The notes: generated by a model from the sequence alone, not told the origin. Shown: positions 1 through 33,141, counted from the first letter of the stretch. The stretch: DNA of 64,000 nucleotides from Mytilus trossulus (GCF_036588685.1 NC_086380.1:26226001-26290000); one strand, 5' to 3'. Made by a program: numbers and translations.

Positions 1-1350
1 ATAAAAGGATTATCATGTTGAAGAAATGTGTCCCTGTGAGTTTCAAGTAACAATGGTTTACAACTAGTATATAATTTTTTATAAAACTGTTTTTGCTCAT
101 TTCTAATAGAACTAGGATCTGTTATCTCAGTCTCGTCCTCCAAAATAAGTTTGGGAATAATTTTTTCTGTGTAATGTTTTTTTTCCCAAATTACAAAAAT
201 AGTTACTTCCCTTTTCCCCCTCTACTTGCCATCTTGCCTTAGCTCTTGTAATTATCCCTTTTACATTTTTTTCCCTCAATATTTTTAATTCTAGTTCCAT
301 CCCTTCCCTTTCTTGGTATACTGATGGCAAGTTATTCTCCAAAAGTTTTTCATCTAATAATGATATCTTATATAGTAAATCTTTTTCTTTTTTCTTTTCT
401 TCTTTTTTCTGGAAAGACGAAAAAGAGATAGCAGACTCACGGACTTTCATCTTAATCATATCCCATAAAAGCTGATAGCTTATATTAAACTGTTTATCCT
501 CTGTCTCAATATCAATAGATGGATCAGACTCATATTCTTCAATGACAGTTTTGATGTCCCCTTTTACTTTCTCAATAAATTCAGTTTCCCTTAAAAGACT
601 GTTATTAAATTTCCATGTACCCTTCCCTCTTATCTGACTAGAAAACTTTAAATTAATCGATACAGGAGAATGATCCGATCTATAACTTATTCCTATATCT
701 GATGAAACTACAAATGCTTCTATATCTGATGTAATCATGAAGTAGTCCAAACGACTTTGTTTGTGATTTGGACCCCGCCATGAGTACCTATTATCAAAAG
801 GGTGCTGCTGGCGCCATATATCTAATAGATCTAGTTCATGCATTACCTCATGAATCTTGGCTTTTGACTTGGGGTTGTTTTCACTTCTATAATGTAATGT
901 GTCCATGTCATAGTCTTGAACAACATTCCAATCTCCCACTACTACAATTGACGAATTGCTGTAGCGGGATATTTTCTGTTTTATGTTCTCAAAAACGACT
1001 GGGTCATCATTATTCGGTCCATATATAGCTGCCAAAGTTATACGGTAGTCCTGAATGGTGATATCTAATATAATAAAATTACCCATCAGGTCTATAGTTT
1101 CATCATGAATCTTGAATTCGAAAGTATTTTTGAAAAGAATAGCTACCCCTCTACTTTTACTAGAATAAGAACTAAATTTCCCCACATATCCCCATTCATG
1201 AAGCCATTGTTTTTCTTTTTCAGATGTGCTATGGGTGTCTACTAATATAGTTATATCATATAAGTCCTTATATTTTGTAAATATATCAATTCTTTTAACT
1301 GTTTCTGATAAACCCCTGCAGTTTACGCTACCAATAGTTATATTCGACAT
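1..1350 (-). mobile_element. Tx1/L1-clade LINE ORF2, N-terminal apurinic endonuclease domain; frameshifted near 180 and running off the window start
   Basis: ORF 127..1350 has APE motifs: SVNCRGL, GVAILF, IYGPN, VVGDWN, SRLDYF, SDHSPV. It is followed by the Tx1/L1 linker WKFNNSLL...RAKARW..EGEKGSNYF. Confidence 0.92.
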
Positions 1351-5141: not shown

Positions 5142-6344
5142 CTATAGTTCATCCATGAATCCCCAGGGCTTTACTAAATCGGCAGACACGTGATTTGTCG
5201 AATGCTCTGAACACCGATAATCCTCAGATATTAACTCATCAATTCTCTTTCGATTTATGTTAAAGTCCCCATTTTTACATTTGAATGATTTTGTATATGA
5301 TATTTTTAGACTGTATTTTTTTTGGATTGTTTTAAGGAATCTAAATAGGTTTGTTGCCAAATCTCCAAATTCTTGACCGGACATTCGTGTATCCCATACC
5401 TGAAGGGCAACAACATTTGGTCCCTCACAAACCACTAGTTGTTGACAACGAGAAATGTCTAAATCAAATACACCAATCTGACGATACAATGCCTTCCTGT
5501 TAGTACGGGTTCCCTGTTCATGTATAGCACTCACATGATAATGTTTAATGTACCACGCAATAATGTGATTAAAAAAAGCTGGAGGAAGAAACTCAAACTC
5601 TAAGCATAACCAACTAGTAATGTTAACGGTTTGATTTTTGTTCATTAACTTTTTCTTAACTTTGTTAAAAGAGCAGGAGTCCATCATGCATGGCATGTAT
5701 AATGCGTTTGAATCCAATAGCTTCACAATAATATCGAACCGTTTCATAACTTCAAGTAAATGTTTTTCGTTCTCCAAAAACTTCAATTTTGGTTCTTTCC
5801 GGAACAAAAGACGTATTAGTTCGGAAGTCAGTTCCCCAGTTTCTCTTAGTGTTTGCCAGTCATTTGAAAGTTCGATAGAAAATTCTATTTTATCAGATAC
5901 TAGACATCTAAAAGCATCAATCAGCCATTTTGAGTTCAAAATAACATGATCTTTTAAATTTTCCTCATCAAAGTAAATAACTGTTCCGATGTCATTAAAG
6001 TATTGCAAGCATCGTTTAAATTCATCATCATTGTGTAAGCCAATGCTGTCATGTTTTGCAATTGTACGTAAATTCGTAGTTGTATCAATTGGCACTTGAC
6101 TGTTTTTCAATCTTTCTATAACTTGTTGAAATAAAAGCCATTTAAGTGGACAGTCTCTACCCCAATCTTTCATAGTCATAGCAAGGCTAGATATTTCTTT
6201 TCGTATCTCTTCAAACACAATGTCGTCATCTTCAATATTCGAAACAAAATGAATGTTTCTCAAATGTTCTTTTTGCTGTTCTTTCAGAATCTTGCTTAAA
6301 TTCTTTTTGAATTTGTCTTGACGCTTTGCACGTTTGTGTGGGTC
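5142..6344 (-). CDS. Roco terminal exon: end of Roc (G5) and COR domain
   Basis: Acceptor ttacag|GAC; IHFVSN; PLKWLLF; LQYFNDIGTVIYF..LKDHVILNSKWLIDAFRCLV; FEFLPPAFFNH; stop at 5142-5144. Confidence 0.9.
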   Translation of the reverse strand, partial: DPHKRAKRQDKFKKNLSKILKEQQKEHLRNIHFVSNIEDDDIVFEEIRKEISSLAMTMKDWGRDCPLKWLLFQQVIERLKNSQVPIDTTTNLRTIAKHDSIGLHNDDEFKRCLQYFNDIGTVIYFDEENLKDHVILNSKWLIDAFRCLVSDKIEFSIELSNDWQTLRETGELTSELIRLLFRKEPKLKFLENEKHLLEVMKRFDIIVKLLDSNALYMPCMMDSCSFNKVKKKLMNKNQTVNITSWLCLEFEFLPPAFFNHIIAWYIKHYHVSAIHEQGTRTNRKALYRQIGVFDLDISRCQQLVVCEGPNVVALQVWDTRMSGQEFGDLATNLFRFLKTIQKKYSLKISYTKSFKCKNGDFNINRKRIDELISEDYRCSEHSTNHVSADLVKPWGFMDEL

Positions 6345-9300
6345 CTGTAATATACATATGTGATAACTAATATACAATTGTCGTTACTATTATTGGCAAA
6401 TACGTCATTTCAAATTGTATTCTTCTGACTTTTCAGGCTCGTTCAGTCTCGTTAAAATCTCGTTCTTGTTTAGTTCCAAAACATGTGATACAAGTGGAAA
6501 ATATCAATGAATTTTAAAAATATTATAATCAAACATAACGCTGTAAAAAAATTGTGTATTTACAATGAATAAATTTTAAGTAATCCAGTTACGACCATTC
6601 AAGTCTGGATTTATAGCTAAAATTTTGAGAAAATGGGTGATGGATACAAAATATGATTTTACAAGAATCATGTACATCCCATATTATTTTGGTCTTTTCA
6701 AATTTCTTAGATATATATTTTTCAATTAAATTTGATGTATAAGTCTTATTTTCTGAGATGAACTACATGTAAGTCGTCACACACTATAAGCCATTGCATT
6801 TTTGACAGGCATCGCAATATGCGTTATGATCAGACATGGCAATTCAATTCAATGCTACGGATCTATATTAACTCGATTCTTTTTTTAAACAATGACTGAT
6901 TGTAATTTTTTTAATTTATTTTTGGCATATTTTCTTTTGGCAAATTTAATCTTTTTCATCTTTTTTTCTTTCTTTTGTTACTAGTATCAACACAACTTCA
7001 GTTTTATTTTACGTCTTTATGCATTTTAAAAATATCAAGACAATGTATTGTTAGGCAGAACTTTACCTTTATTTTGTCTTCATTTGTACATACAACAATT
7101 ATTGGAGGATCTAATCTGTTTTCCTTTGTCGTTGACCAGTAACAATGAATCGCGTCAAACCAGAATCTGACATACTCTGTAAAGAAAATGGTCGTTCTAC
7201 AATTGAACATACCATCAGCACATACATGAACAAAATCAAGTACTAAATAATTCTGATAAAAAAATCTTCTTTGACATAAGACATGACACATCTGCTAAAA
7301 ATAAAGGGCAACAGTAGAGCAGAACCTTTCTAATTCCAAAATGTAGTCCATGAAAAAAGGGATATAGTGTTTGTTTCAACTAATTATTTTTTTTATCATA
7401 TTATGATGTAATTCTAGCGGTATTTTAAACATTGCTTATGACAGCGATATTTGGCTAGAAAAACTAAGATTGACCTATGATTTTTTTTTCATGAATGTCC
7501 TGTACAAAGTTAGAAATATCGCAATTATTATCTAATAGTGCGGATCTATGTATGTTGCATTGGCGTTTGATTTGTTATACTTCAGCGTATCCGTTTTTCC
7601 GTTGTTTTCCTCTTGCAGTTGATGTGTTTCTCTCGTTTTCAGTTTGTAACACGAATATGTGCTCTCTCATTCGATTTATGAATTTTGAACAGCGTTAAAC
7701 TACTTGTGTCTTTACTAAGCAATTCAGTACTTGACTAAGGCTATCAACCATAAAAAAACACATTGTATTGGCGTCTTTTTATATTTATTTGTATGTTTAT
7801 AAATACCTTTTGTCAGTTGTGTTTTATGTTTGAGATGTAAGTTTGCACAGTTTTAACGGATATATCCCAAGTATTGCCATATTCACCAGTTACATGTATT
7901 ATGTTTTTCCATGTAGCAACCAAATTTTCTCACCCTAACGGAACAAATTTAACTAACTGTAATATATGTTTGAGGTTCAATTAGATTTTAAACTAGGTTT
8001 AACTCGCCAATTTCGACAATTCCTGTACCAAGACATGTATAGGACATTTAATATTCACTCGTTCTCGTAGTTAATGACGTTTATTTCTATGAGTTTTTAA
8101 GGACTTTCTTTTTAAAATTACCTTGTGCCTTTTTTGCAATTCTTCATGAATGAAAAGATTTTATTATGCATTCAGATTTGTTTCTTTTTGAAATTGAAAA
8201 AAAAGAATTAAACTCAATTCCATTTAAGAACTTACGTGCTGTGTCTTGGAAATCAATCCATAATTTTTCAGCACAACTAGACTCTAAACTGTCTGTCACT
8301 AGAAGAAAAACTGCACACTTTGACAGAAAGACTTGATGTGTAGCATAGAAATCTTTCTGACCAGCAAAATCCCACAATGCACAGAACGCCGACATATCAT
8401 GCGAATCATTTGCATTCCGATGAACACATGACTGCATGATGGAATTAGTCATTTGGGCAATATTCTCCTCACTTTGTATATCTCTTTCATTTTCAACTTC
8501 ATTGCTTTTCATTGGATTGTTTTCAAACCTTTTGAATTTATTTGTTCTCGCTCTTTCCTTCCCATCGTTCATCGTGTTTCCGTTTTCTTTACTTTCGTCG
8601 ATAAAATTATTTGTATTTTCCTCTTTTATTTTATCGACAGATGTGTCAAACATGTCGGAACTATCTTCCGTAAAATTACTAATTCCAACGTTAAAACTGC
8701 TTTCAAAAACTTCTGTTTGATCTGTTTTATCTTGACATGACTTTGTACTCATTTCCATTTGTTCGTCATTTGTCATTTTCTTTTGTAGAATGAGTGCCTG
8801 GTGGATGTCTGCTATTGAGTCGTCTGAACTGAAGCTTGAATTCTTTTGACCAAAATAGCTGTCTTCAATATTTTGTTCGGTCGTCTCGTTTTTATTCTCT
8901 TTCTTCTCTGTATACACCTGTTGAATCAATCTGGCTAGATCGTGATCTATCTCTGTGAGAATGATAAAAAATAAGCAATCAATCTTTAGTTTCAGTGTGC
9001 TTTTTTTTCTGTTGCATTACAATGCTGAGGATAATACAGTCCTTGGATGGTGCAAACTTCCCACTAACACCATACACCATAACACCATACACCATACACC
9101 ATTACACCATACACCTTGTACCATTACACCATACACGTTACACCTTTGCACCATACACCTTACACATTACACCATACACCATTACCCATTCTATCTACAC
9201 GATCCAAAATTACCCATAATGCAATTAAATTTCAAAGATTAAGATTATTATTATTGTTTATGTTTACTATTTGAAAAAAACAAAATAAAAAGAACTTCGT

Positions 9301-21300: not shown

Positions 21301-24300
21301 TTGAATTAACTGTTTTCTAATCCATAGCACTTGGTTACCTTCAGTTCTATTTTTGTCTTGTTTTGAAAGCCTTAAAAGAGCTGCTCAATTACTTATCCAA
21401 GGCACCTGGGTTACCTTACAATTCGCGGGTTGTTGTTTTTAAAAATTTTGTTTATTTTTGTATTTTTTGGTGTGTTTTGTATTTTTTATAGTTGCGTTTA
21501 GTGTGTAAAAAGATATGAAAATTTGACGTTCGTGACTTCACATGTACGTACCAAATAATGACCTCATTAAATAAATTTCGTCTTGCCTGAATGATCGTTC
21601 TATTGGAACTCTTTTTATGAAAAATATTTCTTAAGCTTACATAGATAAAAACTGACTTTTATAGAAAAAAGTAGGGGGTATGATAATAGGTATGCGATAA
21701 AGGGTGCGCATCAAAGTTGCGCGAAATGGATTAAACAGCAGGCTTTTTATCAAATATTTAAAACTACTGTATTTACCATGTTTACTACTAAACATATGAT
21801 AAAATAGTATAATTTGAATAAGAGCTTCTTACTATTGCATGGGCTCCAACTTCCATCTTCAATATTGATATTGCATTTCTTAATATCGATACCATCTGTA
21901 CTTTGGGTAGATGATGACTGGTCTTTTGTCCCCCACAGTAATCTACGCATTAAACTGGTTTTCCCGACTCCATTTTTACCAATAATAATAACTCTTGCAA
22001 AATAATGTTTTCCACACTCTTCATTTTGAAAGAGTTCATGTATATCCGTGTGTATATCTTCATGTGTTGATGACAGTAGGGGCTCTTGAAACAAAATTAA
22101 AGAGAACAAAAATTTTGAACAAGGAACTCATTTTTTAATCTTTCAGCTTTAAACGTTCACTTAAAATGAACAAAAAACGTAATGCGATTTGCTAGACTGA
22201 GTCCTCTTTTCAAACTTATTTAGTTGGGTTTTTTTTTTGGAAGTTCACCGTAAAATTATCATGTTGTTCTGAAGATTATTTACATTTCTCTAGTAATTGT
22301 GTTTATGAATTGATGCTGTTCTGATGGCGTTGTGTACTTAGTATAATGATGATTCAGAATTTATATTTTTATTGCAACACTATATTATGATTATAACCAA
22401 TAATATATACCGTCATTTTCTTTTTCATTCAGCTGTACAGGTAGACTTTCCACGGCGCCAATTATGTTACTAGCCTTGCATTTGTATATATCGTATTGAA
22501 GTTCATCAGATGTCTCAAAAATAACTGTCCTCAGTCCTTTGCCGTTCGATTCCAAACTTGACTTTGTGTCCACAAATTCGTTATTCAAAAGAAGTCTACA
22601 CCATCCAGCAGACGTAAGTGGTAAATAAGATCGAACATAACATTTCAATACAGTTGTTTTTCCTCCTTGATCATATGTAATAGTTTCTTGAGAAAGAATT
22701 GTTGGTAAGACTAAAAAGCAAATAAACATTTTAGTTCATTCTGTAAGTTTTGTTTTTAAAATATATAAAAATGAGAAGAGACTTTTCCAAAAGTCACATG
22801 AAAGTTTAAATAACATGATATAAAGATTATAATTAAACATGCTGCCAGTTCCACTTACATAGTATGAATTAAGTGTCAGTCATTTCCTTTCACAATGTTT
22901 ATCCCCTAATTATCACATTAGTTGTAAAATATAAAACAAATGTAATAATATCTTTTTACGCAATTTAGATTGTTGTTTTGCATAATTTGAAAGAGGATTG
23001 CTGCTCAGTAGGAAGCTATTAAACCAAAAGTTCCAAATAGAGAAGTTGAAATCATCTCTTCGTAAATTTTACAGACGCCGTCAAGAGTTGGTTGACCGTT
23101 ATGGAATAATCGTTTCACATATGATATCGGGTATGTTCATTATGTCGTAGCTCCAATACCTTTCCCTTTTCACGAATTTTACCTACGAATTAGACTATTT
23201 ATCGGATTTACAAAAACAGAAGCAACACGACTATGGAGCAGGTTCTGCCTACTCTTCCGGAGCACCTGAGATCACCCGAAGTTTTTGTGGGGTCTGTTGT
23301 GCTTTTGTCTTTTGTTTTCTATGTTTTAGCCATGGCGTTGTCAGTTTATTTCCAATCTGTGCGTTTGACTGTCCCTCTAGTATCTTTTGTTCCTCTTTTG
23401 TAAGTCAGAGTATTCTGTTACATCGAACTATACTGGACTGTACTTCCTATACCAACTATGAAAAATACATTTGGACATCTCTCAAAATGTACAGCTTATG
23501 CGTATTTTAGTTTATTATAGTAGTGATAAAATAAGGAACTTACCAAAGACATAACACTTCAACGATGTAATTATGATAATGGCAATATAAACTGAAATAT
23601 AAAATGGTAATCAAATATGAGTATAAAAGAGGGACAAAAGATACGAAAGGGACAGTCAAACTCATCAATCGAAAACAAACTGACAACGCCATGGCTAAAA
23701 ATGAAAAGGACAAACAGAAAAAACAATAGTACACATGTCACAACATAGAAAACTAATGTATAAACAACACGAACCCCACCAAAAACTAGGGGTGATATCG
23801 GGTGCTCCGGAAGGGTAAGCCGATCCTGCTCTTCATGTGGCACCCGTCGTGTTGCTTATGTGATTACAGTAGGTCACATTCACTATCCATAATAAACTAC
23901 CATTTTCCATTTTTAGATGGCAACGTTCCAAAAATTCAAAACAATTGTGCCATATGCGGATATAGTCATAGGGTCTTGGCATCGGAAATACACACATTTA
24001 TTCTAAAACCTGTTGTTGGCGTGACACGGGTTATGTTTTTTTATATATATTTTATGATAGTGTGATACTAAACCCCTGGAGCTGGCATATCAGTAACTGC
24101 TAGTTGTCATTTGTTAATATATGTACAATTGTCATTTATTCTGCATTGGCTAGAGGAATAGGGGAATGTTTAGATATAAAAAAAACATGTTTAAGTATCG
24201 ATGCATTTTTTCGTCTGACCCAAATCAGGGACGTTTGGCCTTTGATAATATCATTTTTTTTTTGTATTCGTTAATTTATATTGGTTTGGGTTCATGTTCA

Positions 24301-27300
24301 GCGAACTATAAAAAAGAAGGTGTGGTATGATTGCCAATGAGACAACTATCAACAAAAGACAAAATGACACGGACATTAACAGCTTTACGGCCCTCAACAA
24401 TGAGCAAAGCCCATACCGCATAGTCAGCTATAAAAGCCCCTGATAAGACAATGTAAAACAATTCAAACGAGAAAACTAACGGCCTTATTTATGTGAAAAA
24501 AATAAACGAAAAACAAATATGTAACACATAAAACAAACGACAACCACTGAATTACAGGCTCCTGACTTTGGACAGACACATACATAAAAAATGTGGCGGG
24601 GTTAAAAATGCAAGCGGGATCCCAACCCTCCCCTACCCTAGGATAGTGGTATAACAGTACAACATAAGAACGAAGTATAAAAATCAGTTGAAAAAGGCTC
24701 AACTCATCAGATGGACAAAAATACAAGTGGACGTGGCCGGGTACTAATACATCCGGACAAAGAAGGACACACACAATGAACAGATATGAGAGTACTCGCA
24801 GTTATCTGACAGCTAGTACAAAGCCACTAACAACTAATTAAAAAAAAACATGCATCTAAGACTTAACTATCAATCCGTACATATCCACCTTCCAATGGAT
24901 TTAGTGTAAAAACGTACAAAACAACCAGAGAAAAACATGACATTGTGCTATGCCAAGTTACAGGTATCGACAGAGTGTAGATTCATGAATATGTATATGT
25001 ATATAACATACTAGTAATATTAAGTTAGCTTTTAATTTACTGTTAACAAAATCAATATGTATACCAACAAAAACAATATTCAATGATCTTATTACAGTGT
25101 TGAATAGGCACCTTTTATAATAAGTTTATTTAAAGAAGCGACAAGTGAACATGGGTCATTTCTAAATTTCCGCGCACGGTTAACAACATTTTTGTAAAAA
25201 TGAGGAAGTGTTATCCCGTTTGAAATAAGTACAACCAAACTTCAAAACCAAAATGGAAAAAAATAGTAAACATGGTAAAGGTATAAAAGTAATTTATGGT
25301 AACGATATTCCTGGTTTAATAATTTACCAGTAATACATAAGTTGCGTTTGTTAAAATCAAAAACGTCACAACAAACACGGGCATAGCGAACAAGTTGTGA
25401 CACATAAACACCTTAAGATGGTGCCAAAGAAACATCACCATCTAAAAATGGAAAATTAACAATAGGGAACGAAAAATCGTATCTTTTCTCGTAAATTTTA
25501 GTGTGGAGTTTCCCGTTTAAAATCGAAATATCTAAATCCAGGAAAGGAGAGTTATAACATTTTAGAAAGAAATAAGTACACATTAATAATAAAGGTCAGC
25601 TGCTGACCACTTCAGGCTGCTGATTTTTCACGTTGTGTTGAAGATTTATTTTACCTTCGGTTGATGTCTGCTCTTTGGTCGGGTTGATGTCTTTTTGACA
25701 CATTACCCATTTCCATTCTCATTTTGATACCATATATTTTGGATCTTAAGTACATGTTCGTAAATAACTGTCTCATTAAAAAGACTTAACATTATGTGTT
25801 AACAAATCCAAGACGAATTTTTGAGTTGATACCAATAAGTTCTATAAAATTGGACAACATTGTGTATTGACACATTTTAGATTTTTTTTTATGTTGTATA
25901 TACTATCACATGGTGTATCAACAGAACTGCATTTTACAACATCGCAGTATTTTCTAGAACAAATGAATGTGGTATGCGATATACTATCTACTCACCAGCA
26001 ATTATGAAAATAATGATATATGAAACTTGGTATGCATCGGAGACTCCTGAAATTACAATGTATTGAAATATACTAATTTGATAGTATGGCTTTTTTCAAT
26101 TTGTTATAACTTTTATAATGCGATCACTGATATAAACACTTTTTATAAGACTTCTGGAAAATATATCTTTCTTCGGTATTTTGTTATTTATAGCTTCAAT
26201 TCTTGGGTTAGTATGGATCACATGTAAAGACAACAGGTTATAACACATGTCGCCTAAAGAATAACCTGTTTTACTGACTGCATTTCAACAAGAAATCTAT
26301 AAGAGATTGTGTTAACATTCAACAAAGGTAAAACCTATGTCGACGCATATATGCTTGGTCACATAATCTTCGAATCGTACGAAAAACAATTAAGCACAGC
26401 AACTGTAGCAATAGCATCAGCAACACTTCCTCCTTATATAGCAGATACAACAACAGCAGCAACAACCGCAGCAGTTCCCTCCTTTAAAATATGTTATAAA
26501 ATGTCCTCGGCAGCAACAGCAGCAGTTCCCTCTTTTGAAAACATATTTGTTTCGTTTGGAGAACGTGTTTTTCAACAGACTGTCGACATTCCAATAGGAA
26601 CAAACTGTGCCCCTCTACTTGTCGACTTGTTTCTTTATTATTATGAGGCTGATTTCATGCAGGAACTTCTTAGAAAGAAAGATAAAAAGTTTTATCGGTC
26701 GTCCCACTGTTTATATCACTCTGTCCAGCTCTTAATATTATTCCGTATCATGTTTTTGTAACGTTCGTAAATGGTGAAGTTGAAATCATTCCTTCGTAAA
26801 TTTTACGGACGCCATCACGAGTTTGAATAACCGTTTCACAAATGATATCGGATATGTTCCTTTCGTTGTATCTACAATCCCTTTCCCTTTCATGAATGTG
26901 ACCTACCGAATAAGACTATTAACCAGATTTGTTAACACATAAGTAACACGACGGGTGCCAAATGTGGAGCAGGATCTGCCTACCCTTCCGGAGCTTCTGA
27001 GATCACCCCTAGTTTTTGGTGGGGTTCGTGTTGTGTATTCTTTAGTTTTCTATGTTGTGTCATGTGTACTATTGTTTTACTGTTTGTCTTTTTCATTTTT
27101 AGCCATGGTGTTGTCAATTTATTTTAGATTTATGAGTTTGAATGTCCCTTTGGTATCTTTTGTCCCTCTTTTAAGGAAAAGAATTAATTTCCTCAGCAGC
27201 AGCAGTCGTCTGAAGGAAGAGGACAAATTTTATCAACCCTGTGATTTTGTTTTTAATAAATCGAGTTTTTTTTTTCCATGATGGTATATTGACCGTCTTC

Positions 27301-30300
27301 GTGATGAAAGACGAATTTTATGAAAAACAAGCTACAACGAGTATTTGCTATTCGTTCCCAAAAAGAATCGTGTGGTTAATACACTGTACAATATATTTTT
27401 ACCCTCAATGCTCTCCAACTTCGTACTTTATTTGGCTCTTTACATCTTTTTTAACTCGACCGTCACTGGTGAGTCTTTTGTAGACGAAACGCGCGTCTAG
27501 CGCAAAAACAAAATTTCAATCCTCGTGTCTTTGATGAGATTATTGGACAAGAATGGTAGCCACTCTATGGAGAAAAACAGAAAATTGTGCTTTCCCAAAT
27601 AAAAATTTCCCACGATATCCCGGTTTGAGAAAGCGACGAATTTTATAATCACAAGAAGAGGAATATGAAAATTTTGAATGATCTGCAGCGCTGAAGATGA
27701 AAGAATCAACAATCTATTTACGGAAGGCGACACGAGTAAGTAATAAATTGTTAATAAACAAATTTAATCACAGAAATTTATCGGTAGTGGTAACTTACCA
27801 AAAACGAAACTGACATAAACTTATGCTTTTTACAATATCATTGACCGTCAAACCGTCATGTTTCCGTCTAGGGTGGACTTTTTCAACAATCATTTGAAGA
27901 AGCGACGAACAGACCCTGCGGATTCCTTCTTGTTAATCTTATACTCGGAACGACGAAATCGTAAATACGGTGAACTGATGTTTTGCAGACTAGCAAAGAA
28001 AACAACATTTCTGACGATCTAAATTGAGGGCATTGAAGGTGCAACATCAGACATATTGGATAACATAGAGGATTTTATAGCACATCTACAGTGTGGATTG
28101 GCGTTTGCACCGGACCAAAATTGTCAAGATAAATCTAGTCTTCATGTAGATCGTCATTTTTATTTGAAATTGTGATGCACTTGTCATAGATCTACTTATA
28201 ATTTGTTTATTAACAATTTATTACTTACTCGTGTCACTGTGTGTATTACTGTCAATGTACTGAACTGTTAGGTTGTCGTTTTTGAGCGATCTGAAAAGGG
28301 TAACAACAAAATAAATTTCATATTAACAAAAAAAAACAAAGAGGCTATGGCCTTCATGTTTCAGTGCCACGATATGGTCGTTACTATTAACATTCTATGT
28401 TTTATGAAGTCAAAGAATCTTATTTCAATTTGAGATACCTACAAACAAATATGTATACATGTTTGAATAGTAAAACGTCTGAGTTATAAGCACAAGTAAA
28501 CTTGCTTATATATTTTAATAGTGCAAATACCCTCAATTAATATACTTAATTCAATTATACAGCGTTAGTATTTAGATGTGTTTATATAATATCATCGTCT
28601 CCATAGAAAATATGTGTCCAAGAAAAGGATATGTGCTGTAACTGACAACGAACATACAAAACCACTGAATAAACGCTATTGCTTGTCAAGAGTGTGAACT
28701 GAAATAGCAAATAATTTTGTTACTTTTAATTATGTTACTGCATTGATAAAATGTGTTTGATTTTTTCTTATTTAGTTTGGCGATACAAAATAAAGATAAC
28801 ACTCCTCAATTAAGCTTTGAGGTGCCAATATAACATAAATAACGAATCAGTTTCTTCACTACAAAGATAAATATTTTGTTTGCAAACTTAAAAAGCCAGT
28901 AATGCGTCTTATACTCACCCAAATTAAAGATGCAATTGATCAGGTACTAAGAGATGAACAAGCAGGTTTCAGATCAAACAGAAGCTGCACTGACCAAAAA
29001 GCAACACTACGTACCATCATTGAACAATCAGTAGAATTGCAATTATTCCTCTACATCAACTTTGTCGATTTTGAAAGGGTGTTTGATAAAGAACAAAGTC
29101 GGGATGTGACAATTGCTAAGGCATTATTGTATACAAACAAAATGGTGAACATGATCAAGGCAATGCACGAGGATTTCATAGTACAGTTGATACAATAATC
29201 ATCATTCACAAACCCTTTTCAATGGAAATAATGGTGTGAAACAAGGCTGCCTACTCTCCCCTACATCATTCTTGATAGCTATTGACTTGGTAACTAAGCA
29301 TGAACTAGACACTACACCAAGAGGTATACACTGGAACTTCGCACAAAGGCTAGAAGACCTAGATTTGGCAGATTATCTGGCTTTGTTATCTCACCGTTTG
29401 AAAGACACGAGAGACAAAATCCCTCCATGAAACAGGCAAAAACTAGAGCTGCAAATCAAAATCTAGAAACAAAAAGTATGACAGTAAAGACCAGAAAAGG
29501 AGGAACAGTGTCAATTGCTTCTACGAAAAATTTAAAATATTCATGACATTCACCGAGCTACAGACTAGATAGAATTAAAGTAAGCTTTTCAGTCTTTTTT
29601 CAACTTTTCCATTTGACTTTAAGCAAGAAACAATCAGCCTACTAATTTTCTCACATATCACTTTTCATTAGGTCATTGCAGTCCTACTGCTACGTTTATT
29701 ACCATCCCTTATTATTCTGAATACTTCATTGTGGTTGTTAATAACAAAAAGATGAACAGTAAGTGTTTAATTTTAGCATATTTTCAATTTAAAAAAATAA
29801 ATGTATGCAATCAATAACATACATCAAACAGTGGTTTGGTAATAACCTGTTGTATTTTAGTCAATGACGTGTAGTGTTGTTATTTTTGTATCTGAAATTC
29901 AAAAGGTACTAAGCAAGAACTTCCATGCAAAGGCTGCATATCTAAAATATCACATTGTCTTGTAATGATGTAACTTACACTTGTTGGTATATTTCCTGAC
30001 ATGGTTTCGTCGCTTTTATATCTCCATCGGTGATGCATTGATAATCTATAGAAAAAAAAACAAATAATGGAATTGATAAATTAATTCATTCATCACATTA
30101 AATGTGTACTTTAAATGTTAATGTACAGTGATTTTCCTTTAATTACTTCAATTTTCGCTATTAATTTGATGTGTTCATACATGTTATATGTGACGATAAT
30201 CTTGATTTCAATTAAGTTGTAGTATGTTGATATTCGTTACATTAAATATTCAAATACTGTTCGTAAAAGAAGATTAATTCAGCTTTGCTACAACATACTC

Positions 30301-33141
30301 TGCATTTCTAGTTAGCATTATGGAAGTAGTCCTTTAATATAGAGTTATGTGTATACGTGACCCTCAGATGTTGTCTGCTCTATGGTCGGGTTGTTGTCTC
30401 TTTGACACATTCCTCATTTTCATTCTTAATTCTATATCTTGTTTTTGAAACAATGTTCCTGAGATTATGTCTCCAAACTGTATTTCATTTTCAATATACT
30501 AATCATATATAGTAGCCTAAAAACATACATCAGTTTTTATCAATTTCCAAACACTTTGTTCGTAGATAAATTAACTTGTGTCTAAACTTTAAAAAGTTAT
30601 GTTATCAATTTTGGTCGTCTGAATCTATCTTTTGTAACACTGTAACGTCATTTTTCAAATTGATGTTTATTATAATGATTTGAAGTTCAAACATTTGTCC
30701 ATTAGATCAGTAGAAAACAATTAATTGGATAAAGCTCAAACACATCAAACGAACGGACAATGCTTGGTAATAAATCATACACATACAAGGTGATATGTTA
30801 TCGTTTCACATGAACATTTTCAATTGTTTATAGCAACAATTATGTCAATTGAAACTCACCAGATGATAGGTTGGAACATTTCACTTTGAAACACGAGCAA
30901 TCTTCCGTTGATGGTTTACAGAAACAAGTGTTATTTGGTCTTGAAACGAACGCATATCCCCGTGTGTAGTCACAGCGACAAGCTGTATCAATACTATATG
31001 ACTCATTGCTGTAAACAATCTGTCCTTCTTCGTCACACTTTGATTTTCTAAGGATACATTCACTGTTTCCATGGGTAGTGAATACAACAGGTTGATATCT
31101 TCCGTCATTACATTTTGCTAGATTAAACAACGGTTGGAACACTAGCTTACTCCCTTAAAGTAGAAGACCTTAATGCTATATTCTAAATTATGTACTATCG
31201 AAGACTTCTGTGCAATTTTTATTTTACTGTTACATTTTTTATAATCAAGTTTTATTTTGTATTCAATGTTTTTGCCCGTTCTTGTATTGTAGTGCTTTTT
31301 TGTGGAAAAAATGTAGTATCGGTTTTAGTCAAGATTTTTGGGGAAAGTTTCAGATTCGAAACCATTTCGAAATACCTTGCTACAATTGTCTATATCTATA
31401 TAAATAACAAGGATTATTTAATGCAGACATAGCAATTATAACAACTTGTCATGGCGACAATTTTTAGTCCGGATAACAAGTTACAAACAAGGACCAATTT
31501 GATACACATGTTAAATTTCAAAGACAATAATTTTGCTCTCTTAACACTTATACCTTATTCGTTATTCATAGAGATATTCTAAGCATTGAATACATATGTT
31601 TTATAAAAAATAAACTAACAAACCTTATTTTTCAATATATAAATTGTGTAATGTTGATATCGGTAAAAACTAAACGTGTGCAATTAGCACTCATCATGCA
31701 GAGCATTGAAAACGGAATCAAACTACGGAATTCAAATAAGGGCTATTACAACTGCATGTAACGTTTTTGTCCCTAAATTTTAAAATTGTAGGTGCAATTG
31801 AACAACTAATTTACACTTTTACCATGCTAATATTATTTTTAGTAAATGTGCAAAAGTATGCCTCAAAGTTGGTCATCAATTTTGAACATTTTTCTTTCTT
31901 TATCTAGACCTGAAAGATTCAGTGATGCTGGTAGAGGTATCCAGCTGTAGCCTGCATGTAGAGTGGACCCCAGTTAACAAATTGAATCCAACAGTTGGAC
32001 TGATCTTGGTTCAGCAGTCTACAGAAGGTCCGAATTTGTGCTTAAAATGCAATTTATACAAGAGAAACATGACCATAGATAGCCTCAAGGTGACGGAACA
32101 TACATACATGTAACTTTCGAGATAAGTACTATTATGCTGACTTCTCAAAGTGTGGAGCCAAATAACAGTGGTCTGGGTACGCCCATCATATGAAGGTCAC
32201 CGCATGGTAAGGGTTCAGAACTTATTAGTTCCATAAAAAAACTGACCTATATCAACTACATTATGGAAATCTCAATTTTTGAGAGAAAAAAACGTGTTTC
32301 AACCAGTTTTACCTATACTACTTTGATCTGAACCTAAACAACTCTCCTCGTATTTTTCTCCCAGTAAATTGAACAAACACACGTATTTTGATTCCGAATA
32401 ACACGAAATATTTGCTCTCAATCTCCATTCTGCTTTGGTTGGACATTTAAGGTCAAATCCAGTTACTGTTCCAATCATCTAAAATAAAGATATGAATTAT
32501 CTATTTCCCTCATTTTAAATCATGTTAGTTAATCATAATTTATAACAAAGAAGTTACATTCAAGGAAAAACAGTATGTCATTAAACGATGTGATATGCTG
32601 AAATCAGAAAAACAAGCCTGGTATACTATTTTATTTGTTTAAACTACTTTTAAGATTTAGCATTTAAAGATTTCACTGTAACTTGTACTCATCTGGGATT
32701 TATTGATCAAGGATGAAATGTTTTCACAAACGGGTATTAATTTACCTATATAGTCCATAAATAACATATAATGACAATATTATTAACACTATCAGATTTA
32801 CTGCATGTTGAGTATGAATATTAATTTGTACAAAATGCATTTGATATATGATATATAACTTTCGAACACTCAAATGAATTGTGTGAATCTAACAAGTACT
32901 TGAATATTGTATTTTTACTTCCATTGCCTATGACTTGATCTTCAATTTCCTATGCTGAATCGGGTATATTTTATTAAGTATACTACTATTTTAGACATAG
33001 ATTACAGTGGATAAGATGAGTTCATATATACTTTTGATTTTTCATAGAATCAAAATATTGCGACGTCAACAATTTTAATTGTTGATATCGTTCGCAGAAT
33101 AATTTTGATCAAACATTTACCAAGATCAGTAGAATGACCAT
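5142..33141 (-). CDS. Transmembrane receptor-type Roco protein (SP, TNFR-like Cys-rich ectodomain, TM, Ig, Roc GTPase, COR), ~1080 aa, at least 11 coding exons
   Basis: GT-AG exons: 33121-33141, 32313-32478, 30860-31153, 29979-30045, 25996-26046, 23544-23591, 22411-22710, 21833-22084, 8236-8952, 7067-7176, 5142-6344. All junctions are phase-compatible except 29979->26046 (phase 2 vs 1). Motifs: GKNGVGKT, STDGIDI, WDFAGQ, VCTNED, FVSN, then COR. Confidence 0.8.
7067..7176 (-). CDS. Roco exon with Roc G4 region
   Basis: tttacag|..YVRFWFDAIHCYW..PPIIVVCTNEDKIK|gtaaag; phase 1 to 0. Confidence 0.88.
8236..8952 (-). CDS. Roco exon: low-complexity insert followed by Roc G3
   Basis: ctcacag|..IDHDLARLIQQV...ALWDFAGQKDFYATHQVFLSKCAVFLLV..DTA|gtaag; phase 1 to 1, 717 nt. 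Confidence 0.9.
9037..9502. mobile_element. MITE with TA target duplication and internal (ACACCAT)n arrays (Tc1/mariner-like ends)
   Basis: TIR cagtccttggatggtgcaaact / agtttacaccatccaagggctg, TA on both sides (9035-9036, 9503-9504), two degenerate heptamer arrays. Confidence 0.8.
9690..10065 (+). repeat. Interspersed repeat (probable PLE terminal fragment); related copies at ~7540-7715 (+), ~4660-5030 (-), ~7300-7350 (-)
   Basis: Shared gttgatgtgttt..tttgt(a/g)ac..cgatttatga..aac(a/g)gcg motif. Confidence 0.55.
10240..12760 (+). mobile_element. 5'-truncated, decayed Tx1/L1 LINE (RT and C-terminal Cys region) in the large Roco intron
   Basis: KAFDSLDWEF, GIRQGCPLSAILFVFAVEILA, LADDT, EGGLGMIDI, CSVCG..H...C; many stops and frameshifts. 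Confidence 0.88.
11582..11918 (+). mobile_element. Short interspersed repeat inserted into the L1; further copies at ~48736-49050, ~49872-50185 (+) and ~25595-25727, ~30365-30432, ~45515-45581 (-)
   Basis: aaaattga(c/g)aatggaaatggggaatgtgtcaaagagacaacaacccgacc...gacttgggacaggcgcaaaa..gcggggttaaaca recurs; it interrupts the L1 reading frame. Confidence 0.8.
14733..15614. mobile_element. Kolobok-like MITE
   Basis: TIR ggagactcgcggata / tacccgcgagcctcc, RR termini, flanked by ttga / ttaa. Confidence 0.65.
15990..16138 (-). repeat. Fragment of the hammerhead-bearing repeat family, truncated at the ribozyme
   Basis: Reverse complement reads acgcgtgtttggc..aactctggtatctataat..gtcgatgccactgctggtg, similar to the region 3' of the HHR at 39281. 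Confidence 0.5.
17083..17159. repeat. Palindromic hairpin element
   Basis: tggcctgggccgtgatattcg ... cgaatatcacggcctaggcca. Confidence 0.8.
17470..20937 (+). mobile_element. 5'-truncated Penelope-like retroelement (Naiad-type RT, no C-terminal GIY-YIG), inactivated
   Basis: CDC..SP...GHVITGDL, GPKFREP, VPADK, YWIPK, TFDFSTLYT, QVVGIPMGTNCAPLL, FRYIDY (YIDD mutated), YDKRDDF, YGIYISQLIR. ORF ends ~19720, then a long 3' region ending in ...gattttactttttt. Confidence 0.9.
20086..20637 (+). repeat. ~263-bp tandem direct repeat in the PLE 3' region
   Basis: 20086-20348 and 20349-20637 are near-identical; the second copy has a 27-nt insert. Confidence 0.9.
21110..21281. repeat. Long palindromic element
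   Basis: catggcaacatccgtatcatatgtcgtatcatcct ... agggtgatacggcatgtaatacggattttgccatg, with extended flanking arms. Confidence 0.8.
21833..22084 (-). CDS. Roco exon with Roc P-loop (G1) and G2
   Basis: FARVIIIGKNGVGKTSLMRRLL..STDGIDI; tttcaag| ... |gtaag; phase 1 to 1. Confidence 0.92.
22411..22710 (-). CDS. Roco exon encoding an Ig-like domain
   Basis: LKCYV..AGW...DIYKCKASNIIG pattern; symmetric phase 1 exon of 300 nt. Confidence 0.82.
22990..23399 (+). mobile_element. PLE 3'-end fragment (family also at 26540-27172 +, 56420-56620 +; 23626-23870 -, 55170-55310 -, 56880-57420 -)
   Basis: LLSRKLLNQ..KLKSSLRKFY.R remnant followed by the ggagcagg..cttccggagc..ttagccatggcgttgtcag..cctctttt tail. 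Confidence 0.8.
23544..23591 (-). CDS. Roco micro-exon, second half of the TM helix
   Basis: tatatttcag|..YIAIIIITSLKCYVF|gtaagt; 48 nt, phase 1 to 1. Confidence 0.75.
23626..23870 (-). mobile_element. PLE 3'-tail copy, inverted relative to 22990-23399 and 26540-27172
   Basis: Reverse complement matches 23324-23399 and ~26950-27172. Confidence 0.8.
24310..25590 (-). mobile_element. Decayed PLE (3' RT end plus terminal repeat)
   Basis: Minus strand gives PFLDLDI, DFSFPIVNFPFLDGDVSLAPS*GVYVSQLVRYARVC; the tail contains gtggtatgattgccaatgagacaac. Confidence 0.8.
25996..26046 (-). CDS. Roco micro-exon, first half of the TM helix
   Basis: gtaatttcag|..VSDAYQVSYIIIFIIA|gtgagt; 51 nt, phase 1 to 1. 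Confidence 0.75.
26540..27172 (+). mobile_element. Internally deleted PLE (RT fragment plus 3' tail)
   Basis: NIFVSFGERVFQQTVDIPIGTNCAPLLVDLFLYYYEADF, then KLKSFLRKFYGRHHE and the family tail. Confidence 0.85.
27240..27990 (+). pseudogene. Polinton/Maverick packaging ATPase fossil, interrupted by a hammerhead repeat
   Basis: Across stops and frameshifts: FSMMVY*PSS**KTNF (decayed Walker A), PKRIVWL, GQEW*PLY, RNMKILNDL, DERINNLFTEG, HRNLSVV, FEEATNRPCGFLLVNL..TDVL. Confidence 0.7.
27461..27503 (+). ncRNA. Degenerate type I hammerhead ribozyme (core CUGGUGA)
   Basis: cgtca ctggtga gtct tttgt agac gaa acgcgcgt c tagcg. Confidence 0.55.
28900..29520 (+). mobile_element. RTE-clade LINE RT fragment
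   Basis: LRDEQAGFRSNRSCTDQ..LRTIIEQS..YINFVDFE; GVKQGCLLSP; LEDLDLAD.LALLS. Confidence 0.85.
29979..30045 (-). CDS. Roco exon, end of the Cys-rich ectodomain
   Basis: ttctatag|DYQCITDGDIKATKPCQEIYQQ|gtaagt. Confidence 0.75.
30860..31153 (-). CDS. Roco exon, TNFR-like cysteine-rich ectodomain
   Basis: CNDGRYQP..GNSECILRKSKCDEEGQ..DTACRCDYTRGYAF..CFCKPSTEDCSCF; phase 1 to 1. Confidence 0.85.
32313..32478 (-). CDS. Roco exon 2 (end of signal peptide, first four Cys)
   Basis: tattttag|MIGTVTGFDLKCPTKAEWRLRANISCYSESKYVCLFNLLGEKYEESCLGSDQSSI|gtaaaa. Confidence 0.82.
33121..33141 (-). CDS. Roco first coding exon (signal peptide start)
   Basis: aaaATGG context with in-frame upstream stops; MVILLIL|gtaaat joins exon 2 to give MVILLILMIGTVTG. 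Confidence 0.65.

What the first reader, a model, noticed from the sequence alone, without database searches (positions are those of the whole stretch)
5142..33141. Receptor-type Roco GTPase: TNFR-like ectodomain + TM + cytoplasmic Ig + Roc-COR, no kinase
Seen: spliced exons give signal peptide MVILLILMIGTVTG, a 16-Cys ectodomain, the TM YIIIFIIAVYIAIIIITSL, an Ig domain, a Roc GTPase and COR, then a stop. Known: characterised Roco proteins (LRRK1/2, DAPK1, MFHAS1, Dictyostelium Rocos) are soluble and are regulated through Roc-COR dimerisation. Inference: this is a single-pass 'receptor GTPase' in which ligand-driven ectodomain clustering directly switches a Roc-COR dimer, possibly a lineage-specific innate-immune signalling system. 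The ORF track shows it only as unrelated fragments.
Basis: partly seen in the sequence, partly recalled or inferred. Interest (0 to 1): 0.92.

Follow-up and report, generated by a model that had tools for sequence, protein, structure and literature searches.

The report
Mussel TNFR-like transmembrane Roco GTPase
This mussel gene really does encode a single-pass membrane protein that joins a TNF-receptor-like outer domain to an inner Roc-COR GTPase switch, and it belongs to a very large, mussel-specific and apparently undescribed receptor family.

Summary
On the minus strand, 12 exons (33141-5142) chain with canonical AG/GT sites and consistent phases into an open 1096-codon frame. The parts in order are: signal peptide, 16-Cys ectodomain, short stalk, one TM helix split over two micro-exons, an I-set Ig domain, a Roc GTPase with a ~186-aa acidic insert, a complete COR-A+B, then a stop.

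Three lines of evidence support this single-gene model.
- RefSeq and other gene models in five Mytilus species show the same order, including the TM before the Ig.
- Transcript-like contigs from two public runs end exactly at the Ig exon borders and continue elsewhere. Their depth also fits the 51-nt TM exon.
- All seven paralogous loci examined are colinear.

The genome is Mytilus trossulus. The AlphaFold model of a homologue's ectodomain matches only TNFR-superfamily ectodomains at the top of two independent fold searches, with modest scores and no sequence signal. The last exon folds as the COR of C. tepidum Roco and LRRK1/2.

The ectodomain exon has at least 150 copies in this genome. In paralogues it is fused to nSTAND3-ankyrin, HEPN, AIG1 or Ig arrays with a weak B-box match instead of Roc-COR.

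Ligand, GTPase activity and clustering-driven switching remain untested. Oyster Cys-rich receptor expansions and Aplysia TLR-ROCO fusions are partial precedents, so this is a new variant of known kinds.

The parts
33121..33141 (-). Coding exon 1: the ATG plus the first 7 codons of the signal peptide (MVILLIL), with donor gtaaat.
   Evidence: It matches the N-terminus MIILLIL of RefSeq XP_076107521.1.
32313..32478 (-). Exon 2: the rest of the signal peptide (MIGTVTG) and the first 4 Cys of the ectodomain. It ends in phase 1.
   Evidence: tblastn of Mytilus homologues gives 67-85% identity.
30860..31153 (-). Exon 3: the core of the Cys-rich ectodomain (10 Cys), the part with a TNFR-like fold.
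   Evidence: The acceptor at 31153 restores the conserved GSKLVFQPLFNLA motif. There are at least 150 copies in the genome.
29979..30045 (-). Exon 4: the last 2 Cys of the ectodomain (DYQCITDGD...CQEIYQQ), with donor gtaagt. Reading through the donor gives V and then TAA.
28229..28290 (-). Exon 5: a short extracellular stalk.
   Evidence: The sequence match to the stalk of P0151 is weak, but the phases fit.
25996..26046 (-). Micro-exon TM-A: the juxtamembrane residues and the first half of the TM helix (…YIIIFIIA).
   Evidence: It is 81% identical in paralogue C8:26.35 Mb and homologous to the P0151 TM. The depth in run X1, 1.58, equals 6.2 x 51/200 for that bin.
23544..23591 (-). Micro-exon TM-B: the second half of the TM helix plus the basic stop-transfer residue (YIAIIIITSLKCYVF).
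   Evidence: Conserved exons occur in paralogues (SIAIIVITAFRCYVF; …FLKTYVF). The X2 contig carries 47 nt beyond the Ig exon.
22411..22710 (-). Ig (I-set-like) domain exon, lying on the cytoplasmic side of the TM.
   Evidence: Pfam Ig_3 scores only 0.044. The best PDB sequence match is MuSK Ig1 at 1.7e-4, followed by titin. Paralogue P0164 passes the Pfam cut-offs. Contigs from X1 and X2 lie exactly on 22411-22710 with 1 mismatch.
21833..22084 (-). Roc exon 1: the P-loop GKNGVGKT and switch I.
   Evidence: Pfam Roc 1.5e-6.
8236..8952 (-). Roc exon 2: a ~186-aa acidic, low-complexity insert followed by beta3 and switch II (WDFAGQ).
   Evidence: Pfam Roc 1.5e-8.
7067..7176 (-). Roc exon 3: the G4 region (VVCTNEDK).
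5142..6344 (-). Last exon: the complete COR-A and COR-B, then a stop. No kinase or other output domain follows.
   Evidence: Pfam COR-A 1.5e-13. The AlphaFold model has pLDDT 89. Foldseek matches C. tepidum Roco COR at 7e-13, and also LRRK1 and LRRK2.

Best explanation
This is an intact, transcribed Mytilus trossulus gene for a 1096-residue type I membrane protein.

Proposed layout (topology inferred, see below):
- Outside the membrane: a cleavable signal peptide, a 16-Cys ectodomain with the ladder-like fold of TNF-receptor cysteine-rich domains, and a short stalk.
- In the membrane: one TM helix.
- Inside the cell: an I-set Ig domain, a Roc GTPase interrupted by a disordered acidic insert, and a full COR-A/COR-B. 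The protein ends there.

Family context:
- The gene is one member of a tandemly clustered subfamily.
- That subfamily sits inside a Mytilus-specific family with more than 150 members. In that family the same ectodomain is plugged onto interchangeable cytoplasmic switch or effector modules: Roc-COR, nSTAND3-ankyrin, HEPN, AIG1, or Ig arrays with a weak B-box match.

Most likely function:
- It is a surface sensor of the innate-immune or cell-death type.
- An oligomeric extracellular ligand would change the spacing of the receptor chains.
- That in turn would change the monomer/dimer and GTP/GDP state of the Roc-COR switch.
- The Ig domain and the acidic insert would serve as docking surfaces.

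What is shown: the exon structure, the domain identities, the folds, the family expansion, and splicing around the Ig exon.

What is inferred: the topology, surface localisation, the ligand, GTPase activity, dimerisation and an immune role.
For: Gene model:
- 12 exons with canonical splice sites chain to 1096 codons.
- RefSeq XP_076107521.1 (M. galloprovincialis, 1103 aa) aligns exon by exon and has a single TM at 213-231, ahead of the Ig.
- Nine full-length models were checked, from M. galloprovincialis, M. californianus, M. trossulus and M. coruscus. All nine have a TM at about 210-275, a P-loop, DxxGQ and COR-A. Eight start with a hydrophobic signal-like N-terminus, eight have exactly 16 Cys before the TM, and six give an Ig match.

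Transcript evidence:
- Contigs of 634 nt (run X1) and 527 nt (run X2) lie exactly on the Ig exon with one mismatch and continue for 329/5 nt and 180/47 nt that are not adjacent in the genome.
- Intron bins 22100-22299 and 26100-26499 have zero depth in X1.
- The depth of the TM-A bin fits a 51-nt exon.

Genomic linkage:
- 7 of 7 paralogous loci are colinear.
- 28 of the 101 scored COR exons have a same-strand Cys-rich exon 12-58 kb upstream. The controls give 8 downstream and 0 on the opposite strand.

Folds:
- The ectodomain model is of homologue P0001, which is 80% identical (pLDDT 79). Its top Foldseek hits and the top 25 VIA-align hits are all TNFR-superfamily ectodomains, with Z up to 5.8.

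Module swapping is shown. Restriction to Mytilus among named hits is shown.
Against: - RefSeq annotates the near-identical copy on contig C17 only as a truncated 678-aa 'roco6' that starts inside the Roc exon. No full-length database model of the window's own gene was found.
- The run labels are 'RNA?', which is a guess. The relevant splice joints were not printed because repeats filled the joints table. I therefore did not directly see one molecule spanning from the Cys-rich exon 3 to Roc.
- The TNFR match is fold-only and modest (Foldseek E 6e-3, Z below 8). There is no Pfam or PDB sequence signal.
- The Ig exon itself is below the Pfam thresholds.
- G4 is a variant (TNED).
- Nothing here tests ligand binding, GTP hydrolysis, dimerisation or an immune function.
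Confidence: 0.6

Rival explanations
1. These are two separate products: a short secreted or membrane-anchored Cys-rich protein (a decoy or adhesion molecule) from the upstream exons, and a soluble Ig-Roc-COR protein from the downstream exons. On this view the full-length model is a prediction artefact.
For: - Many database entries hold the ectodomain alone. Examples are the 183-aa proteins P0207, P0210, P0220 and P0223.
- In the window, read-through of the exon 4 donor gives V and then TAA, which would yield exactly 183 aa.
- RefSeq models the C17 twin as Roc-COR only.
Against: - The Ig exon starts in phase 1 at an acceptor site and so needs upstream coding exons.
- The X1 and X2 contigs extend 329 and 47 nt upstream of the Ig exon, and depth fits TM-A.
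- Independent gene models in five species join both halves.
- The order is colinear and strand-specific at 7 of 7 fetched loci and at 28 or more pairs genome-wide.
- A short isoform may well coexist with the long one.
Confidence: 0.07
2. The architecture is real, but the protein is not a ligand-clustered cytokine-type receptor. Either it sits in an internal membrane and its Roc-COR acts in trafficking, as with LRRK1/2. Or its ectodomain mediates cell-cell, self/non-self or pathogen adhesion rather than binding a soluble oligomeric ligand.
For: - Characterised animal Rocos act on endomembranes (review PMC6337361).
- Kaur et al. (PMC8195603) proposed adherence of pathogens or transmissible tumour cells as the trigger for the oyster receptor-like expansion.
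- The very large copy number and the tandem arrays are typical of recognition families.
Against: The only fold relatives found are TNFR ectodomains, which bind oligomeric ligands. No localisation signal was examined, and no data here discriminate between these options.
Confidence: 0.22
3. This particular copy is a dispensable or decaying member of a fast-turnover family and has no function of its own.
For: - It has a 94-100% identical twin on C17.
- No full-length database model of the window's own gene was found, and contig depth is low (about 5-6).
- The introns are full of transposons.
Against: All 12 exons are open with intact splice sites and intact G1 and G3 motifs. Spliced contigs that are 99.7% identical exist in two runs.
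Confidence: 0.1

Closest known systems
Roco family (C. tepidum Roco, LRRK1, LRRK2, DAPK1, MFHAS1)
   Same: It has a Roc GTPase immediately followed by COR-A and COR-B, with G1 GxxxxGKT and G3 DFAGQ. The COR fold matches PDB 3dpu, 3dpt and 6hlu and the LRRK1/2 structures.
   Different: It has a signal peptide, an ectodomain and a TM. There are no LRR, ankyrin or kinase domains. It has a ~186-aa acidic insert between beta2 and beta3 of Roc, and its G4 reads TNED. The 2019 Roco review never uses the word 'transmembrane'.
TNF receptor superfamily ectodomains (HVEM, Fas, CD40, 4-1BB, TNFR1)
   Same: It is a type I membrane protein with an elongated disulfide-ladder ectodomain. These ectodomains are the top hits of two independent fold searches, with about 90-110 residues aligned.
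   Different: There is no sequence-level similarity: no Pfam TNFR_c6 hit and no PDB profile hit. The cytoplasmic part is Ig-Roc-COR rather than a death domain or TRAF-binding tail. Any ligand is unknown.
Crassostrea receptor-like TRADD-N expansion (Kaur et al. 2021, PMC8195603)
   Same: It is a bivalve lineage-specific expansion with a constant Cys-rich extracellular domain, a TM, and a variable intracellular set of immune or apoptosis modules. Those modules (STAND NTPases, HEPN, AIG GTPases, ankyrins, B-box) are the same kinds seen fused to the Mytilus ectodomain.
   Different: There is no DED or TRADD-N module after the TM here. Roc-COR is not among the modules listed for oysters. Homology between the two ectodomains was not tested. 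The named hits for the Mytilus domain are all Mytilus.
Aplysia TLR-ROCO and MyD88-ROCO fusions (PMC9334734)
   Same: These are predicted molluscan immune receptors or adaptors that carry a Roc-COR module. They are a precedent for a membrane receptor with Roc-COR.
   Different: Their ectodomain is LRR and they carry a TIR domain. They are a few genes, not a large family.
Mytilus ANK-Roc-COR-Death-Death family (earlier scan finding s1-820561)
   Same: It is a kinase-less Roco expansion in the same genome. The last COR exon has at least 475 candidate copies.
   Different: Those proteins are soluble, with an ankyrin array and death domains. This one has an ectodomain, a TM and an Ig, and it ends at COR.

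Membership tests
Roco proteins | A Roc (Ras-of-complex) GTPase domain with G1 and G3 motifs | tested here: met
   Pfam Roc scores 1.5e-6 and 1.5e-8 on two exons. GKNGVGKT and WDFAGQ were read.
Roco proteins | A COR domain (A and B) directly C-terminal to Roc | tested here: met
   Pfam COR-A scores 1.5e-13. A model of pLDDT 89 aligns over 342-367 columns to C. tepidum Roco COR (E 7e-13) and to LRRK1/2.
Roco proteins | Canonical G4 [NT]KxD guanine-specificity motif | tested here: inconclusive
   The motif reads TNED. The Asp is kept and the Lys is replaced. Nucleotide specificity was not testable.
Roco proteins | COR-mediated homodimerisation coupled to the GTPase cycle | not testable with these tools
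   This needs SEC-MALS or crosslinking of purified Roc-COR in the GDP and GTP states.
TNF receptor superfamily | The sequence signature of TNFR cysteine-rich domains (Pfam TNFR_c6) | tested here: not met
   No Pfam hit at E <= 1 on the ectodomain exons. No PDB chain was hit by a 101-sequence profile at E <= 1.
TNF receptor superfamily | The ladder-like CRD fold | tested here: met
   The Foldseek top hits are all TNFRSF (E 6e-3 to 0.1, TM up to 0.62 on the target). The top 25 VIA-align hits out of 48,161 chains are all TNFRSF, with Z 3.4-5.8. The scores are modest, and the model is of an 80%-identical homologue.
TNF receptor superfamily | Binds a trimeric TNF-fold ligand and signals through a death domain or TRAF motifs | not testable with these tools
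   The ligand is unknown. The cytoplasmic part is Ig-Roc-COR with no Death domain hit.
Immunoglobulin I-set domain | A profile match and the conserved Cys pair | tested here: inconclusive
   The window exon scores Ig_3 0.044 and I-set 0.11, both below cut-off. MuSK Ig1 scores 1.7e-4 and titin 0.012-0.018. Paralogue P0164 passes the cut-offs in the same position. Two Cys are present, in LKCYV and YKCKA.
Oyster Cys-rich/TM/DED/TRADD-N receptor-like expansion | A DED plus an NCOA6-type TRADD-N module after the TM | tested here: not met
   No DED or TRADD-N Pfam hit on any exon at E <= 1. The segment after the TM is an Ig domain.
Oyster Cys-rich/TM/DED/TRADD-N receptor-like expansion | A homologous Cys-rich ectodomain | not tested
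   No oyster sequence was in hand. The named hits of the Mytilus profile are all Mytilus.

The most novel reading that the evidence does not exclude
Mytilus has built a family of more than 150 TNFR-fold surface receptors. One sensor ectodomain is wired to interchangeable cytoplasmic switches (Roc-COR, nSTAND3-ankyrin, HEPN, AIG1, Ig with a weak B-box match).

The Roc-COR branch would be the first natural 'receptor GTPase', in which an extracellular oligomeric ligand sets the dimer/GTP state of a Roco switch. Candidate ligands are members of the equally expanded TNF/C1q-fold families, or non-self cells such as transmissible neoplasia.
Probability: 0.25. Interest if true: 0.85.

Novelty: new variant of a known kind. 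Interest (0 to 1): 0.62.

Why it matters
Roco GTPases, including the Parkinson's disease protein LRRK2, are thought to cycle through nucleotide-dependent dimerisation. What sets that cycle in cells is still debated. A natural protein that tethers a minimal Roc-COR to a single-pass receptor, with no kinase and no repeats, would be a simple system for testing whether enforced proximity switches a Roco.

For invertebrate immunity, it reveals a very large mussel-specific receptor family with a TNFR-like fold and swappable intracellular modules. This parallels the oyster expansion described by Kaur et al. It also gives a concrete set of candidate receptors for the expanded soluble recognition proteins of mussels.

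Tried and rejected
- Complex prediction on two copies of COR-B (residues 236-400 of the last exon) returned 'no answer'. It is not evidence either way.
I therefore could not confirm that the Logan contigs encoding P0012, P0153 and similar proteins come from RNA runs.
- In read laying, the joints table was filled by intronic repeats. The splice joints of interest were not printed, and I relied on contig pieces and bin depths instead.
- A sequence search of PDB with the ectodomain profile found nothing. Pfam found nothing on the ectodomain exons.
- Rfam at gathering score found nothing in the window.
- Five literature searches and a term look-up in the mussel pan-genome paper found no paper describing this Mytilus family.
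Exons were used by reference, and database homologues (P0151, P0001) stood in for the joined product.
- My first reading of the exon 3 acceptor (31117) was rejected in favour of 31153, which restores the conserved motif.

Full report
ORGANISM AND SETTING

The window is G000:C8:26226001-26290000 of a 1.3-Gb, 31%-GC, transposon-rich animal genome. Four RefSeq proteins labelled Mytilus trossulus sit on contigs whose lengths equal those of C12, C11, C8 and C5 of G000. The genome is therefore M. trossulus.

CHECKING THE OBSERVATION

I read the minus strand exon by exon. A script then checked each exon separately for splice sites, phase and stops, without joining them. Twelve coding exons carry AG acceptors and GT donors. 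Their phases chain correctly, none has an internal stop, and the total is 1096 codons plus a stop.

The exons are:
- E1, 33141-33121 (MVILLIL).
- E2, 32478-32313.
- E3, 31153-30860.
- E4, 30045-29979.
- E5, 28290-28229 (stalk).
- TM-A, 26046-25996.
- TM-B, 23591-23544.
- Ig, 22710-22411.
- Roc1, 22084-21833.
- Roc2, 8952-8236.
- Roc3, 7176-7067.
- COR, 6344-5142.

Pfam confirms Roc (1.5e-6 and 1.5e-8) and COR-A (1.5e-13). It gives only a weak Ig_3 match (0.044) and nothing for the Cys-rich exons.

ARE THE TM MICRO-EXONS REAL?

AT-rich introns offer chance hydrophobic peptides, so this needed testing. A scan of the 8.8-kb interval found other candidates inside a repeat. Four independent lines support the real exons.

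1. RefSeq XP_076107521.1 (P0151, M. galloprovincialis, 1103 aa) aligns to the window exon by exon. Between the stalk and the Ig it reads ...VSQSHEVSNIIILLIA|VYLAIIVIAVFKSYV..., which is clearly homologous to the window's two micro-exons.

2. Paralogues keep both exons. TM-A is 81% identical at C8:26.35 Mb. TM-B-like exons occur there and at C11:13.30 Mb. In the distant paralogue at C12:39.04 Mb (COR only 31% identical), the second half of the TM of RefSeq XP_063408958.1 is again a separate micro-exon.

3. Nine full-length models from M. galloprovincialis, M. californianus, M. trossulus and M. coruscus all show one TM at about 210-275, a P-loop about 75-160 residues after it, DxxGQ about 210 residues further on, and COR-A. 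Eight begin with a hydrophobic signal-like N-terminus, and eight have exactly 16 Cys before the TM. Six give an Ig match directly after the TM.

4. Public-run contigs:
- A 634-nt contig in run X1 and a 527-nt contig in run X2 lie exactly on 22411-22710, each with one mismatch.
- They continue for 329/5 nt and 180/47 nt that do not lie next to the exon in the genome. That means they are spliced at precisely the predicted borders.
- The intron bins 22100-22299 and 26100-26499 have zero depth in X1.
- The bin holding TM-A has depth 1.58, which equals 6.2 x 51/200. That is the depth of the X1 contig over a 51-nt exon.
- X2, whose contig has only 47 nt upstream of the Ig (TM-B is 48 nt), has zero depth in that bin, as expected.
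- Caveats: the runs are labelled 'RNA?', repeats filled the joints table, and exons 1-5 lay outside the 6-kb stretch I was allowed.

ONE GENE OR TWO?

- All seven paralogous loci that I fetched are colinear from E3 through Roc1-3 to COR on one strand, and six of them also show E2 upstream of E3. Their COR identity runs from 85% down to 31%.
- Among the scored genome hits, 28 of 101 COR exons have a same-strand Cys-rich exon 12-58 kb upstream. Only 8 have one downstream (expected from tandem arrays), and none has one on the opposite strand.
- Of the 26 long database proteins that carry this ectodomain subtype, 22 carry Roc and/or COR, and all 26 are from Mytilus.
- Against this, RefSeq models the 94-100% identical copy on C17 as a 678-aa 'roco6' that starts after the P-loop. 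No full-length database model of the window's own gene turned up.
- Ectodomain-only entries of 183 aa also exist. In the window, read-through of the E4 donor gives V and then TAA, which would make exactly such a product. A soluble isoform is therefore possible alongside the long form.

WHAT THE DOMAINS ARE

Ectodomain:
- An exhaustive HMMER search with E3 found 339 proteins at E <= 0.001.
- An AlphaFold model of the 80%-identical homologue P0001, built with 100 relatives, reached pLDDT 79, and above 90 over the core.
- The Foldseek top hits are uniformly TNFR-superfamily ectodomains such as HVEM, CD40, TNFR1, OX40, 4-1BB, DR5 and RANK (best E 6e-3, target TM 0.62).
- An independent all-against-representatives aligner put TNFR-superfamily chains in its top 25 of 48,161 (Fas and HVEM at Z 5.8, 89-92 residues aligned at 3.1-3.2 A).
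- The scores are modest, and there is no sequence signal. 'TNFR-like fold' is supported. Membership of the TNFR superfamily is not shown.

Ig exon: its best PDB sequence match is MuSK Ig1 (1.7e-4), followed by titin and NCAM2. With one TM, an oxidising-side Cys-rich domain and a GTPase that must be cytosolic, the Ig has to be cytoplasmic, as I-set domains are in muscle proteins.

Roc:
- G1 is GKNGVGKT, G3 is WDFAGQ and G4 is TNED.
- It carries a 186-residue insert between beta2 and beta3 that is rich in N, E, S and D and has a net charge of -18.
- A similar P-loop to DxxG spacing of 147-195 residues occurs in soluble Roc-COR proteins, several of them with death domains, from other molluscs and a coral, and in a chytrid Roco. 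The Roc-COR module therefore probably came from that clade.

Last exon: it models at pLDDT 89. It matches the whole COR of C. tepidum Roco (E 7e-13, 342-367 columns), LRRK1, LRRK2 and M. barkeri Roco2. The protein stops right after COR-B.

THE FAMILY

- The E3 exon has at least 150 scored copies (210 candidates) in this genome, 55 of them on C14.
- The COR exon has at least 101 scored copies (475 candidates).
- The Ig exon has only 6.
- The Ig-type subfamily forms tandem arrays: four genes about 100 kb apart on C8, four on C11 and two on C17.
- In other Mytilus proteins the same N-terminal module and TM are fused to nSTAND3 plus ankyrin repeats, DZIP3-type HEPN, AIG1, or Ig arrays with a weak B-box match.
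- Every named hit of the ectodomain profile is from Mytilus.

HOW IT PROBABLY WORKS

The anatomy is that of a type I receptor whose intracellular part is a minimal Roco switch. From what is known of Rocos (GTP-dependent monomer/dimer cycling through COR; review PMC6337361) and of TNFR-fold receptors (activation by oligomeric ligands), I favour the following model. Ligand-imposed proximity shifts the Roc-COR nucleotide/dimer state, and the Ig domain and acidic insert act as docking sites. The interchangeable cytoplasmic modules are those typical of immune and cell-death systems. Every step of this model is inference. The single complex prediction allowed gave no verdict and is not used.

COMPARISON WITH WHAT IS KNOWN

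- The Roco review contains no mention of transmembrane Rocos.
- Aplysia TLRs and MyD88-like proteins with Roc-COR have been noted (PMC9334734).
- Kaur et al. described an oyster expansion of about 50 proteins with a constant Cys-rich ectodomain, a TM, DED and TRADD-N, and variable STAND, HEPN, AIG, ankyrin or B-box modules (PMC8195603).
- The Mytilus family shares that logic but lacks DED/TRADD-N, has a TNFR-like fold, and includes a Roc-COR branch.
- An earlier scan report (s1-820561) describes a separate soluble ANK-Roc-COR-death family in this genome.
- Five literature searches and a term look-up in the mussel pan-genome paper found no description of the Mytilus receptor-Roco family.

VERDICT

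I class it as a new variant of known kinds, with interest 0.62.

Noticed in passing
window 8393-8950 (-): The Roc domain is split by a ~186-aa insert between beta2 and beta3. The insert is rich in N, E, S and D and has a net charge of -18. A similar P-loop to DxxG spacing (147-195 aa) occurs in soluble Roc-COR proteins of Dreissena, Mya, a land snail, a coral and a chytrid.
   Followed up: partly
window 29973-29980 (-): Reading through the exon 4 donor gives one Val and then TAA, which predicts a 183-aa secreted ectodomain-only product. Database entries of exactly 183 aa that end the same way exist in M. edulis (P0220, P0223). RefSeq 183-aa models with a different tail exist in M. edulis and M. 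californianus. This may be a soluble decoy isoform.
   Followed up: partly
G000 C8:26.23-26.62 Mb; C11:13.27-13.74 Mb; C17:2.95-3.11 Mb: There are tandem arrays of the Ig-type receptor-Roco genes, all in the same orientation within each array: four on C8 about 100 kb apart, four on C11 and two on C17. The C17 copy is 94-100% identical to the window gene and may be a haplotig or a very recent duplicate.
   Followed up: partly
P0176 (RefSeq, M. trossulus 'roco6'), aligned to window 21831-21950 and downstream: The RefSeq model of the twin copy starts at an internal Met after the P-loop and has a different C-terminal 47 residues. It appears to be a truncated annotation.
   Followed up: partly
window 23233-23403 (+), 23540-23843 (-), 26955-27281 (+): Three copies of a repeat that encodes a hydrophobic '...FLAMALSVYF...VSFVPLL' ORF lie in the introns. 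One ends about 30 nt upstream of TM-B. These regions have very high contig depth in all four runs and cause the spurious 'joints' of about 3.7 kb.
   Followed up: no
window 17452-19528 (+), 26309-26761 (+), 28902-29430 (+); 127-1350 (-): The introns and the flank hold retroelement remnants. ORF 127-1350 has an Exo_endo_phos endonuclease domain. The ORFs at 17452-19528 look reverse-transcriptase-like by eye, but the two I scanned have no Pfam hit at E <= 0.001.
   Followed up: partly
An Rfam scan of the whole window at gathering score returned no family at all. I did not try a more permissive threshold.
   Followed up: partly
P0012 / P0153 (Logan contigs of 2.0-2.6 kb): These intronless contigs encode the ectodomain and TM joined directly to the C-terminal part of COR (42% identical to window 5145-5951) with no Roc. 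They are either a Roc-less paralogue or an isoform.
   Followed up: partly
L026-L032 versus the window: Between the window gene and its paralogues, the Ig exon (74% and 46% identity) and the Roc exon that carries the acidic insert (67% and 62%) are the least conserved. Compare the Cys-rich exon E3 (81% and 69%), Roc1 (90% and 69%) and COR (85% and 63%). This hints at relaxed or diversifying selection on the cytoplasmic Ig.
   Followed up: no
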